Below are positions 33,883 to 42,073 of a DNA stretch of 64,000 nucleotides, one piece after another. The stretch lies in IMG/VR virus record IMGVR_UViG_3300046170_000378, positions 148,343 through 212,342 of that record; one strand, written 5' to 3'. Under the pieces are notes generated by a model that did not search any database, had not been told where the DNA came from, and saw only the letters and a list, made by a program, of their open reading frames with translations. Position numbers and translations under genes: made by a program. Position 1 is the stretch's first letter; each line of letters starts with the position of its first letter.

Positions 33883-34494
33883 ATGTCAAAATCAAAAGAG
33901 TTAAGCTACCGTCAGCTATCAGAGAATTTCATCAATTCTAAATCAGAAAAAGATTATAATGCGCTTTACGTTCGTGTGAAGCCAGGTTTGAAAAACTACA
34001 TTCATAATGTGGTCAAAGATAATGAAGCTACAGATGATATTTTGACAAATACTCTTACGAAGATGTGGACCAAGATAGATCAATATGATCCTAAATATCA
34101 AATCACTACATGGCTTTATCGTATTGCCTTTAATGAATGTCTTGGTTGGATTCGTCAACGTAATCGTAAATATAGCATCGATGCAATGAAAGAATATGGT
34201 ATTGAAATCTCAGAACACTATTCTCATACATCAGCTCATGATCTTCTTATTGAGATTGAGAGTAAAACCGAAGCAGATTTTATTGAAGAAGACGAAGCAC
34301 TTATGAATTCTTATGAATTGGCACTAAAAGCAATTCAAGATCTAAAGCCAATGTATCGAGATATTATCGAAGATCGTCTACTTAACAACATGAAATACGA
34401 AGATATTGCATCAAAGTATGGTGTGCCTCTTCAAACTGTTAAGAATCGTATCCGTAGGGGTAAGATTTTGATTCAAGAATCAATGACAAAATAA
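33883..34494 (+). CDS. ECF-type (sigma-70 family, group 4) RNA polymerase sigma factor
   Basis: Region 2 (DDILTNTLTKMW..IDQYD....TWLYRIAFNEC) and region 4 HTH (LKPMYRDII..MKYEDIA..VPLQTVKNRIRRGK); no regions 1 or 3. Confidence 0.9.
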   Translation: MSKSKELSYRQLSENFINSKSEKDYNALYVRVKPGLKNYIHNVVKDNEATDDILTNTLTKMWTKIDQYDPKYQITTWLYRIAFNECLGWIRQRNRKYSIDAMKEYGIEISEHYSHTSAHDLLIEIESKTEADFIEEDEALMNSYELALKAIQDLKPMYRDIIEDRLLNNMKYEDIASKYGVPLQTVKNRIRRGKILIQESMTK

Positions 34495-34598: not shown

Positions 34599-34687
34599 GC
34601 CGGAATGGTGGAATTGGTAGACACGAGGGACTTAAAATCCCTTGGGCAGTAATGCCCGTGACGGTTCGAGCCCGTCTTCCGGTACCA
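34599..34687 (+). tRNA. trnL: tRNA-Leu(UAA)
   Basis: Cloverleaf with long variable arm; anticodon loop CTTAAAA; encoded CCA. Confidence 0.93.
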
Positions 34688-34748
34688 AGCAGGGAGTTAT
34701 ACAATACATGTTGGAACTATATAACTTTAAAATAGAACCCTGCGATAT

Positions 34749-34822
34749 GGACCAGTAGCTCAGCTGGATAGAGCATCTGCCTTCTAAGCAGACGGTCACA
34801 GGTTCGAATCCTGTCTGGTTCA
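34749..34822 (+). tRNA. trnR: tRNA-Arg(UCU)
   Basis: Anticodon arm TCTGC-CTTCTAA-GCAGA; no encoded CCA. Confidence 0.93.
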
Positions 34823-34830
34823 CTAAATAT

Positions 34831-34946
34831 GGGGAGTTAGTCAAATAGGTACGACGCTCCAGCTATAAGGCCGAAAACATCATACTAGTTACGAGGTGTG
34901 ATTAGGCTTGTTGGCAGAAGTAGGGGTTCGAATCCCCTACTCCCCC
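34831..34946 (+). ncRNA. tRNA-like RNA with ~45-nt insertion in the anticodon arm
   Basis: Acceptor GGGGAGT/ACTCCCC, D-arm GTC..GAC, T-arm AGGGG-TTCGAAT-CCCCT, long hairpin replacing the anticodon loop. Confidence 0.75.
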
Positions 34947-35047
34947 GCTCTTAGATAGGTTTAACAACCGAACAACGAGGCGTCAAATCTCACGCCTACA
35001 AGTCGAAAGACGGAGTCTAAGTGGAGTAATTTAAATATATAAACCTC

Positions 35048-35135
35048 GGAGAGGTGGCAGAGTGGTCGAATGCACTGGTCTTGAAAACCAGCGTACAGCA
35101 ATGTACCGGGGGTTCGAATCCCTCCCTCTCCGCCA
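35048..35135 (+). tRNA. trnS: tRNA-Ser(UGA)
   Basis: CTGGT-CTTGAAA-ACCAG, long variable arm, CCA. Confidence 0.93.
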
Positions 35136-35137
35136 TT

Positions 35138-35214
35138 GGTCTGGTAGTTCAGTTGGTTAGAATACTTGCCTGTCACGCAAGGGGTCGCGAGTTCGAGTCT
35201 CGTCCAGACCGCCA
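35138..35214 (+). tRNA. trnD: tRNA-Asp(GUC)
   Basis: TTGC-CTGTCAC-GCAA anticodon arm, CCA. Confidence 0.93.
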
Positions 35215-36745: not shown

Positions 36746-36822
36746 GGGGATGTAGCTCAGTTGGTTAGAGCAGGACTCTTATATAGTCAAGGTCGTGGGT
36801 TCGAGCCCCGCCATCCCTACCA
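36746..36822 (+). tRNA. trnI: tRNA-Ile(UAU)
   Basis: GACT-CTTATAT-AGTC anticodon arm, canonical D and T arms, CCA. Confidence 0.85.
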
Positions 36823-37096: not shown

Positions 37097-38236
37097 ATGC
37101 AAAAATTTAGTAACTTTATGCTTCTTAGAGAAGCTGAAACCAAACTTAAAGTTAATGTACCTTCGGATATATTAGACTTATACAATCTTTTCAAAAAGAA
37201 TGGTAAAGAATTGTATGTGGTTGGTGGTGCAGTACGAGATGCATTATTAGGTAAAAAACCAAAAGACTTTGATTTGGCTACTGACGCATTTCCTGCAGAA
37301 GTTATTGATATTGTTACTAAAGGAGGTTATTCAACAACAGGTGAAGTTGGACACCAATTTGGTGTAGTTATTGTAAACGTACCTTCTGATCCAGCGGGTG
37401 TTGAGATTGCTACTTTTAGAGAAGACATTGGAAAGGGTAGAAGACCAGATGCAGTTGAGTATTCTACTATTGATAAAGATGTACTAAGACGAGATTTAAC
37501 AATCAATGCACTGTTCTATGATATGGGCAGACAAGAGGTTGTTGATTTAGTTGGTGGTTTGGATGATATAAAAAATTCAAAGATTAGAACTGTAGGTGTT
37601 GCAGCTGATAGATTCGCTGAAGATCCTTTAAGAAAACTAAGAGCTTTAAGATTTGCTGGTAGAACTGGATCAAACTTAGAAGAAGAAACTGCTAATGCCA
37701 TTTTAACAGATAATAGTTTAGAAGGTATTAGTGCAGAGAGAATTAGAGATGAGTTTAAAAAATCTATAGTTTCTGCTAAGTCCGCTAAGAAGTACTTAGA
37801 GATGGTCTCTGAATTCAACCTGTGGTCTGTTATGTTTCCTACATTAGAGATCAATAAAAAATTCATAGACACCAATACTTGGCTTGTTCAATTGGGTACA
37901 CTGTTTATTGCCAATGAACATAAAAAAGAAATGAACAAACTTACATTTACCAATGATGAGATTGATGCATGTATTTTCTTAAAGAGAATCATGGCGTTCG
38001 ATGTAAATGACGTGTTTGATTTACATAAGCAATTTAAAAACACCAACATGGACAAGAAAGAAGTTCTTGAATTTGCAAAAATACACAAATTAGATATTAA
38101 AACCTTGAAGGCGTTCTTTAAATATAAACCAACTACTAATGGTAAGGATGTAATGAAAGAGTTCGGCATCAAAGGACCAGAAGTTGCAATAAAGATAAAA
38201 CAAATAGAATCAGATAAATTTAAAAAGACTATTTAA
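37097..38236 (+). CDS. cca: CCA-adding enzyme / tRNA nucleotidyltransferase (class II)
   Basis: YVVGGAVRDALLGKKPKDFDLAT, EIATFR, RRDLTINAL, EDPLRKLRALRF; adjacent to tRNAs lacking CCA. Confidence 0.9.
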   Translation: MQKFSNFMLLREAETKLKVNVPSDILDLYNLFKKNGKELYVVGGAVRDALLGKKPKDFDLATDAFPAEVIDIVTKGGYSTTGEVGHQFGVVIVNVPSDPAGVEIATFREDIGKGRRPDAVEYSTIDKDVLRRDLTINALFYDMGRQEVVDLVGGLDDIKNSKIRTVGVAADRFAEDPLRKLRALRFAGRTGSNLEEETANAILTDNSLEGISAERIRDEFKKSIVSAKSAKKYLEMVSEFNLWSVMFPTLEINKKFIDTNTWLVQLGTLFIANEHKKEMNKLTFTNDEIDACIFLKRIMAFDVNDVFDLHKQFKNTNMDKKEVLEFAKIHKLDIKTLKAFFKYKPTTNGKDVMKEFGIKGPEVAIKIKQIESDKFKKTI

Positions 38237-40273: not shown

Positions 40274-42073
40274 TTATCTAAATATGGTTATATGTCCGGA
40301 TCTTTGGTAAACTTCTGGAGAATTCCATTTACGTGCATAGAATGTATATGTGTAAACACCGTCTGAAACATAGCTCGGTCCATTATTAACACTTCCATTC
40401 CAATATGGATATGAATCAAAATCATCACCATATCCATGATAAATCTCACTACCCCATCTGTTAAAGACCCTAAACTCAACATCGACCCAGCAATTTAGAT
40501 CATAGATCATTTTCCATACATCGTTGATGCCATCGTTGTTAGGTGTAAATGTATTAGGTATAAAAACGGTCCATGGCCAGCATTCTTGCATACCGGGATC
40601 ATCAACACATGGCATACCGGTTTCGCAATCTACAGGAATGAACTCAGTTATAGTGTCTGTTAAATACACATACTCTACGACATCAATAAATGTGGTGTCA
40701 TATTGAGTTACATATAATGTATCAGTTATGAACACAGGAACCTCTACCTCAACAGTGTCTATCACATCAATATAAATAGTATCAGTTATGAACACAGGAA
40801 CCTCTACCTCAACGGTGTCTATTATGTTTACATAAACAGTATCGGTTATTGTTATCGTTTCATATTCACATGAACCATCGTCTTCTTCTGCATTTGGGTC
40901 AAAGTTAATTGCACATATATCTGTGCATCCTACTTCTGGCTCACACAGTGGAACAGGCGGTAAGTTCACAACAGTAGTGTTATTACCAGTAACTATTTCG
41001 TCATTAACAGTATTAACTTCTATTACAAATAATCCACCTTCAGACCAACCTTCTGGAAATACAAACTGTCCAGTATTAAATGTTTGACCTTCACCTGGCG
41101 GTATTTGTAAAATCATACTATCTCCACTATCATAACAAAACGTCGCGTCGGGATGCCAAAGTTCTACACAATATGTGTTCATATCAATGTCACCAGAATT
41201 AGTTATAGTAAATTGAACTTGATAATATGGATTTCCAGAGGCATCACAGCCGGTTATGAATTCAACATTTCCGGCTACTTGTGCATCTGTTGAGCCTTCA
41301 GGTGGATAGACACAGCTACCATCATCTTCAGTTGCATTTGGTTCATAATTTAATGCATCGGGATCGGTACAACCTGGAATAACAACAGTTTCGCAAATGA
41401 AATCTTCACCCTGGATCATTGCAGGTCCAGGATTGTCTTCTCTACAAACTGACCATGAATTATCACAATCCATATCTGGATATATTTGCACATTTGAAAG
41501 TGGCTGTTGTCCATCGTCATTAGCACCTAATTCAGCCCAACCTCCACCTGGGGCGTTAGGGCCATCATTTTGATACCATGAGTTTGAATAGTTTATTTGC
41601 CAAATAACAAACTCTACACATTCTCCTTGATCTAGCCAATAATCAATTACTGGAGCAGCACAGCAGCCTATTGCTGGAGAACCATCACAATTACCATTAC
41701 TTGGATTATCTAGCTCTACAACAAAGGTATCTCCAGTGTACAGTGGAAATTCTGAACTAGCATAATTTGATGGAAAATCAGAAGCTGATGGACCATACCA
41801 CCAACCAGGATGATTAGAAGTTGGTGCCATAAAACATGGACCATCGTCGTCTACATCGACAGCTTCATTTTGACCAGGAATATGAAAGCCAATCATTACC
41901 ATATTGACATGATCATTACTTCCATTATATCCAGTAGCTCCGCAGCCCTCGCCGTTAATGACTTCAACTGTAACTTCATAAGTATTTAAATTTACATCTG
42001 TAATTGCCAAATCACATTGACCTGAAATCACAAATACATGAAAAAACGTAAGTAAAAATAATAATCTTTTCAT
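40274..42073 (-). CDS. Secreted protein with T9SS type-B (gliding-motility-associated CHU_C) C-terminal domain
   Basis: Signal peptide; GCTDPDALNY..ATEDDGSC repeats; ITDT.Y repeats with a 60-bp duplication; IPNTFTPNNDGINDVW..VFNRWG..WNG..DGVYTY. Confidence 0.85.
   Translation of the reverse strand: MKRLLFLLTFFHVFVISGQCDLAITDVNLNTYEVTVEVINGEGCGATGYNGSNDHVNMVMIGFHIPGQNEAVDVDDDGPCFMAPTSNHPGWWYGPSASDFPSNYASSEFPLYTGDTFVVELDNPSNGNCDGSPAIGCCAAPVIDYWLDQGECVEFVIWQINYSNSWYQNDGPNAPGGGWAELGANDDGQQPLSNVQIYPDMDCDNSWSVCREDNPGPAMIQGEDFICETVVIPGCTDPDALNYEPNATEDDGSCVYPPEGSTDAQVAGNVEFITGCDASGNPYYQVQFTITNSGDIDMNTYCVELWHPDATFCYDSGDSMILQIPPGEGQTFNTGQFVFPEGWSEGGLFVIEVNTVNDEIVTGNNTTVVNLPPVPLCEPEVGCTDICAINFDPNAEEDDGSCEYETITITDTVYVNIIDTVEVEVPVFITDTIYIDVIDTVEVEVPVFITDTLYVTQYDTTFIDVVEYVYLTDTITEFIPVDCETGMPCVDDPGMQECWPWTVFIPNTFTPNNDGINDVWKMIYDLNCWVDVEFRVFNRWGSEIYHGYGDDFDSYPYWNGSVNNGPSYVSDGVYTYTFYARKWNSPEVYQRSGHITIFR

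What the first reader, a model, noticed from the sequence alone, without database searches (positions are those of the whole stretch)
34831..34946. tRNA-shaped RNA whose anticodon loop is replaced by a long hairpin
Seen: perfect 7-bp acceptor stem, D-arm and canonical T-arm, but about 50 nt lie where a 7-nt anticodon loop belongs. They fold as ATAAG(G)CC/GGCTTGT and ACATC/GGTGT stacked on a partial CCA/TGG stem. C73, no CCA. The insert is far too short for a bacterial group I intron. Inference: a tRNA with a protein-spliced intron, or a tRNA mimic acting as a decoy for anticodon nucleases, a ribosome or synthetase binder, or a mini-tmRNA-like RNA.
Basis: partly seen in the sequence, partly recalled or inferred. 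Interest (0 to 1): 0.75.

Follow-up and report, generated by a model that had tools for sequence, protein, structure and literature searches.

The report
Phage tRNA mimic with conserved tail
The 116-base stretch is a real, conserved gene of uncultured marine phages for a tRNA-shaped RNA whose anticodon arm is replaced by a long arm ending in a self-pairing loop, fused to an even more conserved 80-base RNA domain; it is a new family of non-decoding tRNA mimic whose job is still unknown.

Summary
Window 34831-34946 (+) has a 7-bp acceptor stem, D-arm, canonical T-arm, C73 and no CCA, with 50 nt where a 7-nt anticodon loop belongs. Rfam's tRNA model scores it 42.5 bits; default ARAGORN skips it.

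It is not a decaying tRNA and not an intron-bearing tRNA. At least 78 distinct homologues occur in marine viral and metagenome contigs. Every helix covaries, including the inserted arm (92% paired against 42-50% in slid controls; 28 of 33 pairs with double changes). The tRNA tertiary core is kept. No consistent anticodon or intron parse exists.

- The apical loop carries a 6-nt palindrome that changes only by paired substitutions, which implies a kissing-loop homodimer.
- The tRNA-like half directly abuts an 80-nt, nearly invariant four-way-junction "tail" (34947-35026). The unit is about 200 nt.

No other Rfam family matches. The tail is absent from about 50,000 phage records and 185,579 species genomes. 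Metatranscriptome assemblies hold it.

Best reading: a non-decoding, dimerising tRNA mimic matured by tRNA-processing enzymes, with the tail as effector. Its target is unknown.

The parts
34831..34946 (+). tRNA-like half of the unit (116 nt): acceptor, D-arm, long arm, variable loop, T-arm, discriminator C
   Evidence: Rfam RF00005 at 42.5 bits. Own model R2 scores it 133.9 bits. Pair counts on A4 and A6.
34831..34837 (+). Acceptor stem 5' strand; pairs with 34939-34945. Discriminator C73 at 34946.
   Evidence: 7 of 7 pairs. 5 of 7 pairs show changes on both sides across 67 distinct homologues. Discriminator over the 78 distinct tail-bearing sequences: A 61, C 14, U 2, G 1.
34840..34855 (+). 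D-arm with A14, A15, G18, G19, A21
   Evidence: U8:A14 is invariant. The Levitt pair 15:48 covaries: A:U 38, G:C 24 of 67.
34857..34917 (+). Long arm in place of the anticodon arm. Basal helix 34857-34864/34910-34917, middle helix 34869-34872/34905-34908, asymmetric internal loop GAAA(A)/GAUUA, apical helix 34877-34881/34895-34899.
   Evidence: Helices 3, 4 and 5 of A6 have 8 of 8, 4 of 4 and 4 of 5 pairs with changes on both sides. A4.
34882..34894 (+). 13-nt apical loop; self-complementary hexamer ACUAGU at 34884-34889
   Evidence: In subfamily II the homologous hexamer is GCUAGC, ACUAGU, GAUAUC or GAGCUC. Its three self-pairs are 100% complementary, each with changes on both sides. Other subfamilies have UGAUCA or UCGCGA in a hairpin loop.
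34922..34938 (+). T-arm (AGGGG / UUCGAAU / CCCCU)
   Evidence: U54, U55, C56, A58 and C61 are invariant in 67 sequences. 4 of 5 stem pairs covary.
34947..35026 (+). 80-nt 'tail' abutting the discriminator. Closing helix P1 (34948-34956 with 35015-35026, 3-nt GUG bulge), hairpin 1 (34958-34969), hairpin 2 (34978-34997), hairpin 3 with GAAA loop (35002-35011), A-rich joining strands.
   Evidence: MFE fold. 98.9% of cells paired against 29-44% when slid; 7 pairs with changes on both sides. Model R1 scores it 108.8 bits.
34749..34823 (+). tRNA-Arg(UCU), 7 nt upstream; same neighbour in most subfamily I loci
   Evidence: ARAGORN; upstream flanks.
37097..38236 (+). tRNA nucleotidyltransferase (CCA-adding enzyme family) at the end of the tRNA cluster; a possible maturation partner
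   Evidence: Pfam PF01743 and PF12627; PHROG 2244. A short paralogue sits directly after the RNA in 13 of 32 subfamily II loci.

Best explanation
The feature is the 5' half of a roughly 200-nt, two-module non-coding RNA of uncultured T4-like phages. The phage in the window is jumbo-sized and probably infects marine Bacteroidota.

Module 1 (34831-34946) folds as a genuine L-shaped tRNA. Its anticodon arm is replaced by a conserved arm of about 60 nt. That arm has an asymmetric internal loop and an apical loop with a self-complementary hexamer. Two copies most likely join loop to loop into a homodimer.

Module 2 (34947-35026) is an almost invariant four-way-junction RNA. It starts at the nucleotide after the discriminator.

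The RNA cannot decode, because it has no anticodon loop. I infer the following maturation:
1. It is transcribed with the tRNA cluster.
2. RNase P cuts its 5' end.
3. RNase Z may cut after N73. That would free the tail with an exact 5' end and leave the tRNA-like half to receive CCA from the host or phage nucleotidyltransferase.

The tRNA fold would then serve as a processing and stability handle and as a bivalent mimic for factors that read the acceptor/T-arm 'elbow'. The invariant tail would be the effector, binding a very conserved partner.

Shown: conservation, fold, self-complementary loop, module junction, presence in RNA assemblies. Inferred: processing steps, dimer, target.
For: - At least 78 distinct homologues occur in viral and marine metagenome contigs.
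- Family-wide pair counts: 92.4% paired against 42-50% when slid, with 28 of 33 pairs changed on both sides and all arm helices included. The subfamily alignments agree.
- The many G-U pairs fit the + strand only.
- Tertiary core: U8:A14, G18, the T-loop and C61 are invariant, and Levitt 15:48 switches between A:U and G:C.
- Palindrome: 3 of 3 self-pairs show double changes and 100% complementarity. Two of the paired columns are adjacent, so they cannot pair within one molecule. One G.U variant exists.
- Tail: 98.9% paired with 7 covarying pairs. It always begins right after N73.
- Every tail that passed the T-loop filter follows a tRNA-like half. The tRNA-like half also occurs without a tail (L073).
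- RNA evidence: many marine metatranscriptome assemblies hold 0.43 of the unit's sampled words, which is about the tail's share of the unit. Two hold 0.71-0.86. One of them (X16) holds only 0.24 of the surrounding 1.4 kb.
- A tRNA nucleotidyltransferase is nearby.
Against: - No read-level data exist. So the ends, the cut at N73, CCA addition and the dimer are untested.
- No protein neighbour is conserved across all loci.
- The discriminator varies (A, C, U, G) and subfamily II acceptor stems carry a mismatch. This argues against charging but says nothing about the target.
- A crude count of palindromes in hairpin loops did not beat shuffles: 69 of 78 against 51% expected. The dimer claim therefore rests on covariation at one homologous site.
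- One relative (L196) lacks the palindromic hairpin.
- The invariance of parts of the tail is partly built in, because the search patterns fixed those bases.
Confidence: 0.6

Rival explanations
1. An intron-bearing tRNA: the roughly 45-nt insert is removed by a protein endonuclease and a ligase, giving a normal decoding tRNA.
For: The tRNA core is intact. ARAGORN with introns allowed can force a tRNA-Val(UAC) with a 27-nt intron.
Against: The forced parses differ in anticodon, amino acid and intron position in nearly every homologue. The insert is itself conserved and covaries. The 'UAC' becomes UAU in close relatives. The 76%-complete genome has no splicing endonuclease, RtcB or RNA ligase. 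The insert is too short for group I, and Rfam finds no intron family.
Confidence: 0.03
2. A decaying tRNA pseudogene with a random insertion.
For: Default ARAGORN skips it. The element is absent from the closest relatives L004 and L005.
Against: 78 distinct homologues have compensatory changes in the insert. No normal-length tRNA with this acceptor stem was found in 59 related loci. RNA assemblies hold it.
Confidence: 0.01
3. A decoy or sponge for host defence toxins that attack tRNAs. For anticodon nucleases this was the reader's idea. A variant is a decoy for toxins that act on the acceptor or CCA end.
For: It is phage-borne and accessory. The acceptor, T-arm and elbow are kept under selection. 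A nucleotidyltransferase that could add or repair CCA is nearby.
Against: No anticodon loop is conserved, so anticodon nucleases have nothing to cut. The decoy idea does not explain the invariant tail or the dimer loop. The discriminator and acceptor stem vary.
Confidence: 0.12
4. A cis-acting leader: the tRNA-like structure is an operator in the mRNA of the downstream gene (nucleotidyltransferase in subfamily II, gp32-like in subfamily III) for autoregulation by mimicry.
For: In 13 of 32 subfamily II loci a 241-aa tRNA nucleotidyltransferase starts about 95 nt after the tail. In subfamily III a gp32-like gene follows.
Against: In the window and all of subfamily I the RNA is followed by tRNAs, not an ORF. 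The downstream gene differs between subfamilies while the RNA stays the same. An AT-rich promoter-like stretch, seen by eye, lies between the tail and the ORF in L154.
Confidence: 0.07
5. The tail is a self-cleaving ribozyme of a new class. It cuts at its own 5' edge and sets the 3' end of the tRNA-like half.
For: It has about 80 nt, four helices and near-invariant joining strands, and it sits exactly at a processing site.
Against: No match to any Rfam ribozyme family at E up to 10. A 2',3'-cyclic phosphate would block CCA addition. RNase Z already explains a cut at this position (established knowledge). Nothing tested.
Confidence: 0.07
6. A mini-tmRNA or a Y-RNA-like (YrlA) Ro60 partner.
For: It has a tRNA-like domain plus an extra module. 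The host phylum has Ro60: Bacteroides thetaiotaomicron is positive in the control search.
Against: Pair 3:70 is G-C. ARAGORN finds no tmRNA, and no tag frame was seen by eye. No Rfam family other than tRNA matches. No TROVE gene is present in 5 phage records. The ends lie at the acceptor stem, the opposite of YrlA (PMC4201824).
Confidence: 0.04
7. A DNA-level element, such as a palindromic protein-binding or recombination site inside a tRNA-like att sequence.
For: The hexamers are classic 6-bp DNA palindromes. The element shows presence/absence polymorphism in tRNA clusters.
Against: The palindrome's sequence changes while its symmetry is kept, which fits base pairing rather than protein read-out. 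A G.U variant exists. Abundant G-U pairs are strand-specific. Metatranscriptome assemblies hold it.
Confidence: 0.03

Closest known systems
YrlA, the bacterial and phage Y RNAs with a tRNA-like domain (Chen et al. 2014, PMC4201824)
   Same: A non-coding RNA made of a faithful mimic of the tRNA acceptor, D and T arms plus a non-tRNA effector module. The Levitt pair covaries. [quoted passage not shown] YrlA also occurs in phages.
   Different: In YrlA the RNA ends emerge on the 'anticodon' side and the acceptor stem is closed by a loop; here the ends are at the acceptor stem. YrlA lies within 4 kb of Ro60; no TROVE gene is present here. There is no Rfam match. YrlA has no dimer loop and no tail.
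Phage T4 stable RNAs rnaC and rnaD (species 1 and 2)
   Same: Small stable RNAs encoded in the tRNA cluster of a T4-type phage, directly after tRNA-Arg(UCU). rnaC has a T-arm and an acceptor-like stem. By my own knowledge, their function has stayed unknown for decades.
   Different: There is no homology. R2 gives rnaC 14.5 bits, less than it gives ordinary T4 tRNAs. R1 finds nothing. The T4 RNAs carry CCA-like ends. They have no palindromic loop and no tail motif.
GOLLD and ROOL RNAs (Kretsch et al. 2025, PMC12286853)
   Same: Phage RNAs of unknown function found near tRNA islands. They form RNA-only homo-oligomers held by kissing loops. [quoted passage not shown]
   Different: They are 580-800+ nt and form cages of 8-14 copies. 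This RNA is about 200 nt with one self-complementary loop, so a dimer is expected. There is no Rfam match to either.
HIV-1 dimerisation initiation site and similar kissing-loop dimers
   Same: A 6-nt self-complementary sequence in a hairpin loop of 8-13 nt with flanking A/U. Natural variants keep the symmetry.
   Different: The context is unrelated (a retroviral genome leader). The comparison is by analogy only, from my own knowledge.
tmRNA tRNA-like domain with helix 2
   Same: Acceptor stem and T-arm with a long helix leaving the body; no anticodon.
   Different: tmRNA has G3:U70, no D stem, a tag reading frame and pseudoknots. None of these is here.
tRNA-linked small RNAs released by tRNA processing (MALAT1 mascRNA, gammaherpesvirus TMERs, E. 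coli 3'ETS-leuZ)
   Same: A tRNA or tRNA-like fold serves as the RNase P / RNase Z signal that sets the end of a neighbouring functional RNA. The tail starting exactly at N73+1 fits this.
   Different: Those systems are eukaryotic, or the released part is an unstructured trailer. Here both modules are highly structured and conserved. Processing is untested.

Membership tests
Canonical decoding tRNA | Acceptor stem, D-arm, T-arm and tertiary core (U8:A14, G18, G19, U54, U55, C56, A58, Levitt 15:48) | tested here: met
   RF00005 at 42.5 bits. The core nucleotides are invariant and 15:48 covaries.
Canonical decoding tRNA | 5-bp anticodon stem with a 7-nt loop (U33, anticodon, R37) | tested here: not met
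   50 nt lie in place of the loop. No conserved 7-nt loop in any subfamily.
Intron-bearing tRNA (protein-spliced or group I) | Removing the insert restores the same anticodon loop in homologues | tested here: not met
   ARAGORN -i gives 12 different identities and shifting intron sites.
Intron-bearing tRNA (protein-spliced or group I) | Splicing machinery (EndA-type endonuclease plus ligase) or a group I core | tested here: not met
   No PF01974, PF01139 or PF09414 in the 76%-complete genome. No Rfam intron family matches. The insert is 50 nt.
tmRNA | G3:U70 alanine identity, tag reading frame, ARAGORN/Rfam tmRNA call | tested here: not met
   3:70 is G-C in 56 of 67 sequences. ARAGORN -m finds none. 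The only Rfam tmRNA hit is 16 bits over the neighbouring tRNA-Arg.
YrlA / Y RNA | Ro60 (TROVE) gene within a few kb | tested here: not met
   No PF05731 in the own genome or in 4 related records. Those records are 56-76% complete.
YrlA / Y RNA | Match to a curated model, and ends on the anticodon side | tested here: not met
   No Rfam family other than tRNA at E up to 10. The topology is opposite to YrlA (PMC4201824).
T4 rnaC / rnaD | Sequence or structure homology | tested here: not met
   R2 gives 14.5 bits on rnaC and nothing on rnaD. R1 gives nothing.
T4 rnaC / rnaD | Position in a T4-type phage tRNA cluster after tRNA-Arg(UCU) | tested here: met
GOLLD / ROOL | Match to the Rfam models | tested here: not met
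Kissing-loop homodimeric RNA (functional class) | Self-complementary loop sequence kept by paired substitutions | tested here: met
   Alignment A5, columns 61:67, 62:65 and 63:64: 93 of 93 cells complementary, all three pairs with double changes.
Kissing-loop homodimeric RNA (functional class) | Physical dimer | not testable with these tools
   Needs native gels, SEC-MALS or cryo-EM.
Self-cleaving ribozyme (tail) | Match to a known class, or cleavage activity | tested here: inconclusive
   No Rfam ribozyme matches. Activity cannot be tested here.

The most novel reading that the evidence does not exclude
A protein-independent kissing-loop homodimer of tRNA mimics. Each copy carries an invariant 3' domain that is either catalytic or captures a core host machine that reads tRNA elbows or 3' ends (RNase Z, RNase P, the CCA enzyme or the ribosome). 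This would be a new class of small phage 'tRNA-island' effector RNA, a miniature counterpart of GOLLD and ROOL.
Probability: 0.3. Interest if true: 0.85.

Novelty: new variant of a known kind. Interest (0 to 1): 0.72.

Why it matters
Phage tRNA clusters are usually read only as codon-usage or anti-defence tRNA sets. This work shows a widespread, strongly constrained RNA family hidden among them that standard tRNA finders skip and Rfam lacks.

It combines three features in about 200 nt:
- a faithful tRNA body,
- a covarying self-complementary loop, which is evidence for a natural RNA homodimer (few are known),
- an almost invariant 80-nt domain.

That size is small enough for SHAPE, crystallography or cryo-EM and for simple biochemistry with RNase P, RNase Z, the CCA enzyme and synthetases.

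It also offers a tractable relative for two old puzzles. One is what the stable non-tRNA RNAs of T4-type tRNA clusters do. The other is why phages place oligomerising RNAs next to tRNAs.

Tried and rejected
- **BLAST against cultured phages.** Only generic T-arm and tRNA hits for the tRNA-like half, and nothing for the tail.
- **First pattern scan.** It had one N too many and found only an unrelated 129-nt RNA, L003.
- **Supplement of the 10,006-csRNA paper.** Not held, so I could not check whether this motif is listed there.
- **Read laying.** No read ends or junction counts were obtained.
- **Palindrome count.** Palindromes in any hairpin loop, compared with shuffled arms, did not discriminate (69 of 78 against 51% expected). 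I dropped this as evidence.
- **Conserved protein partner.** Neighbour clustering gave at most 7 of 26 loci per family. The nucleotidyltransferase link holds only for one clade.
- **Promoter and terminator scan.** Around the cluster it was no better than shuffles.
- **Apparent upstream motif 'AGGTTTA..GTATAA' in subfamily II.** It turned out to be the 3' end of a small ORF.
- **K-turn reading.** I considered it for the arm's internal loop and for the tail's GUG bulge. I rejected it by inspection, because the GA dinucleotides are on the wrong sides.
- **Loop-E-like reading.** AGUA/GAA in subfamily II stays an untested inference.
- **Pairing of tail loops with the tRNA-like half.** No conserved complementarity was seen by eye.
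- **Loose-pattern hits in species genomes.** All six are chance matches.
- **Single-sequence MFE of the 199-nt unit.** It mis-pairs the acceptor stem. The comparative evidence overrides it.

Full report
**1.

The + strand at 34831-34946 reads as follows.
- The acceptor stem has 7 perfect pairs (GGGGAGU/ACUCCCC).
- U8-A9 and a D-arm with G18 G19 follow.
- After G26 come 61 nt.
- A 4-5 nt variable loop and a canonical T-arm (AGGGG, UUCGAAU, CCCCU) close the structure.
- The discriminator is C and no CCA is encoded.

Rfam's tRNA model aligns end to end at 42.5 bits (gathering score 29), with 57 nt where 13 belong. ARAGORN in default mode calls the 12 neighbouring tRNAs but not this one. The single-sequence fold is more stable than shuffles (z = -2.86). 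The element lies 7 nt after tRNA-Arg(UCU), inside a + strand tRNA cluster.

**2. Where it comes from**

The window is the last 64 kb of a 212-kb IMG/VR viral contig with 34.6% G+C, estimated 76% complete.
- It encodes a Gp23-type capsid protein and a T4-type terminase.
- It encodes a protein with the CHU_C type IX secretion sorting domain, which points to a Bacteroidota host.
- The nearest capsid proteins belong to an uncultured huge phage, Tenacibaculum phage PTm1 and the Prevotella Lak phages.
- Seawater DNA runs hold the locus.

**3. It is a family, and longer than reported**

Pattern scans and a search for relatives of the neighbouring sigma-like gene brought in many homologues. Aligning the flanks gave three results.
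- Ordinary spacers diverge freely.
- The 116-nt element is conserved.
- The 80 nt that follow the discriminator without any gap are conserved even more.

After removing chance hits, 78 distinct tRNA-like sequences carry this tail. They fall into subfamilies with different arms and lengths of 110-144 nt.
- Subfamily I is the window's type.
- Subfamily II has 113-117 nt.
- Subfamily III has about 133 nt and a branched arm.
- At least two more subfamilies exist.

Every tail that passed the T-loop filter follows a tRNA-like half. One lineage (L073, L079, L082) has the tRNA-like half without a tail.

**4. The fold is under selection, insert included**

| Alignment | Sequences | Cells paired | Slid controls | Pairs with double changes |
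|---|---|---|---|---|
| Subfamily I (A4) | 9 | 93.9% | 41-51% | acceptor, middle, apical and T helices |
| Subfamily II (A5) | 31 | 94.9% | 40-50% | 15 pairs |
| Family-wide, model-fitted (A6) | 67 distinct | 92.4% | 42-50% | 28 of 33 |

In A6 the double changes cover every pair of the basal and middle arm helices. That alignment is fitted to the model, so it leans towards the structure. The two MAFFT alignments agree with it.

The many G-U pairs are possible only on the + strand.

The tertiary core of tRNA is also kept.
- U8:A14, A21, U54, U55, C56, A58 and C61 are invariant.
- G18 is present in 65 of 67 sequences.
- The Levitt pair 15:48 switches between A:U (38) and G:C (24).

So this is a real L-shaped tRNA body with an elongated 'anticodon' limb. 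It is not a broken gene.

**5. Not an intron**

With introns allowed, ARAGORN forces the window's copy into tRNA-Val(UAC) with a 27-nt intron. Across homologues it returns Val, Ile, Phe, Ser, Tyr, stop, Trp, Arg, Pro, Thr, Lys and Leu, with shifting intron sites. No anticodon loop can be restored consistently. The held genome has no splicing endonuclease, RtcB or RNA ligase. No Rfam intron family matches.

**6. A self-complementary loop**

The window's 13-nt apical loop holds ACUAGU (34884-34889).

In the MAFFT alignment of subfamily II, the homologous hexamer is GCUAGC, ACUAGU, GAUAUC or GAGCUC. Its three self-pairs (1:6, 2:5, 3:4) are complementary in all 93 cells. Each pair shows changes on both sides. 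Positions 3 and 4 are neighbours, so they cannot pair within one molecule. Symmetry kept while the sequence changes points to pairing between two copies, that is, a kissing-loop homodimer.

Supporting observations:
- One relative has GCUAGU, a G.U variant allowed in RNA only.
- Subfamily III has UGAUCA in a 7-nt loop whose closing stem covaries.
- Subfamily IV has UCGCGA, and L085 has UAAUUA.

Two cautions apply. A crude count of loop palindromes did not beat shuffled arms, so I rest the claim on the homologous-site covariation only. One relative (L196) lacks the hairpin.

**7. The tail**

The tail folds as a closing helix with a 3-nt GUG bulge and three hairpins joined by A-rich strands.
- 97.6% (MAFFT) and 98.9% (model-fitted) of cells pair, against 29-44% in slid controls.
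- 5 and 7 pairs respectively show double changes. Examples are UUAGA/UCUAA changing to UUGGA/UCCAA and UUAAA/UUUAA. In L097 the hairpin-2 stem changes at four of its five pairs.
- The hairpin-2 loop, which the later scans did not fix, is CAAAUCUC in 68 of 83 tails.

The invariance of GAUAGG, GAACAACGAG and CUACAA is partly imposed by my search patterns.

No Rfam family matches the tail at E up to 10. BLAST finds it in none of 50,697 phage records. An exact 27-mer and a loose pattern find no true copy in 185,579 species genomes.

**8. Expression**

The word index gives indirect evidence.
- More than ten marine metatranscriptome assemblies hold 0.43 of the unit's sampled words, which is about the tail's share of the unit.
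- Two hold 0.71-0.86.
- One of them (X16) holds only 0.24 of the surrounding 1.4 kb.

This fits a stable RNA rather than DNA carry-over, but it is not proof.

**9. Genomic context**

The element is accessory. The closest relatives by the sigma-like gene (L004, L005) go straight from tRNA-Arg to tRNA-Asp. No protein neighbour is shared by all loci.
- In subfamily I the RNA follows tRNA-Arg(UCU) in most loci. The window has a 379-aa tRNA nucleotidyltransferase 2.1 kb downstream.
- In subfamily II the RNA stands alone, with no tRNA in loci of up to 14 kb. The whole contigs do have a few tRNAs elsewhere. A 62-72-aa ORF of unknown family ends 8-12 nt before it. In 13 of 32 loci a 241-aa tRNA nucleotidyltransferase starts about 95 nt after the tail.
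- In subfamily III a gp32-like gene follows.

**10. Mechanism**

Shown: the fold, the self-complementary loop, the fixed junction, and presence in RNA assemblies.

Inferred from established substrate rules:
- RNase P cuts at G1.
- RNase Z may cut after N73, as it does for CCA-less precursors. That would release a tail whose first bases enter its closing helix.
- A CCA enzyme may then finish the tRNA-like half.

The variable discriminator (A 61, C 14, U 2, G 1) and the recurrent acceptor mismatch in subfamily II argue against a fixed aminoacylation identity. I therefore read the tRNA body as a processing and stability handle and as a bivalent elbow/acceptor mimic. The invariant tail would be the effector. 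The target is unknown. A decoy for toxins that act on the acceptor end is the most concrete rival. A new ribozyme in the tail and a cis-acting leader are minor rivals.

**11. Comparison with known systems**

It works most like YrlA, which is a tRNA mimic plus an effector module. It fails YrlA membership on three counts: opposite topology, no Ro60 gene and no model match (PMC4201824).

It sits where T4 keeps rnaD and rnaC, right after tRNA-Arg(UCU), but it is not homologous to them.

It shares with GOLLD and ROOL the phage tRNA-island setting, kissing-loop oligomerisation and a conserved 3' region with a variable 5' region (PMC12286853). It is a fraction of their size and matches neither model.

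**Verdict.** This is a real, conserved and apparently undescribed family. It is a new variant within the known kind 'tRNA-mimic non-coding RNA'.

Noticed in passing
L063:329-445, L066:5340-5458, L067:2068-2187, L069:3994-4111 on the minus-oriented strand (also L064, L068, L072): A second kind of long tRNA-like gene (117-120 nt). It has the same acceptor stem GGGGAGU/ACUCCCC and a normal D-arm, a different insert of about 45 nt, and no tail. L069 carries two long tRNA-likes side by side.
   Followed up: no
L003:10485-10612 (-), a 388-kb viral contig: A 129-nt RNA with an acceptor-like stem and T-arm of yet another kind, next to tRNA-Arg(UCG).
   Followed up: no
window 40277-42073 (-): A 599-aa protein with a CHU_C type IX secretion sorting domain, a Bacteroidota hallmark carried by the phage. 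I used it as a host clue.
   Followed up: partly
window 33883-34494 (+): A sigma-70-family gene (regions 2 and 4) just upstream of the tRNA cluster. It is conserved at 53-96% identity in 59 viral contigs.
   Followed up: partly
L154:6003-6221 and L154:6519-7244; L204:14213-14401: In subfamily II the RNA is flanked by a 62-72-aa ORF of no known family (30 loci). In 13 of 32 loci a short 241-aa tRNA nucleotidyltransferase (PHROG 24229) follows, with no tRNA gene nearby.
   Followed up: partly
Alignment A5, acceptor pairs 3:70, 4:69, 5:68: Nearly every subfamily II member has exactly one A.A or A.C mismatch in the acceptor stem. Its position shifts between lineages.
   Followed up: no
L196 (WLWG01027970.1): A 97-nt relative of L097 that keeps the tail but lacks the palindromic hairpin. 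It is a natural 'monomer' variant.
   Followed up: no
L096:1409-1748 (phage T4, NC_000866 70908-71247): T4 has the same gene order, tRNA-Arg(UCU) followed by two non-tRNA stable RNAs. The 3' 92 nt of rnaC score weakly as tRNA-like.
   Followed up: yes
window 36746-36822 (+): ARAGORN calls a tRNA-Ile with anticodon UAU. The same tRNA recurs in related loci.
   Followed up: no
window 34599-35214: CCA is encoded in the neighbouring tRNA-Leu, tRNA-Ser and tRNA-Asp genes. It is not encoded in tRNA-Arg or in the tRNA-like RNA. This is seen by comparing the ARAGORN and Rfam ends.
   Followed up: no
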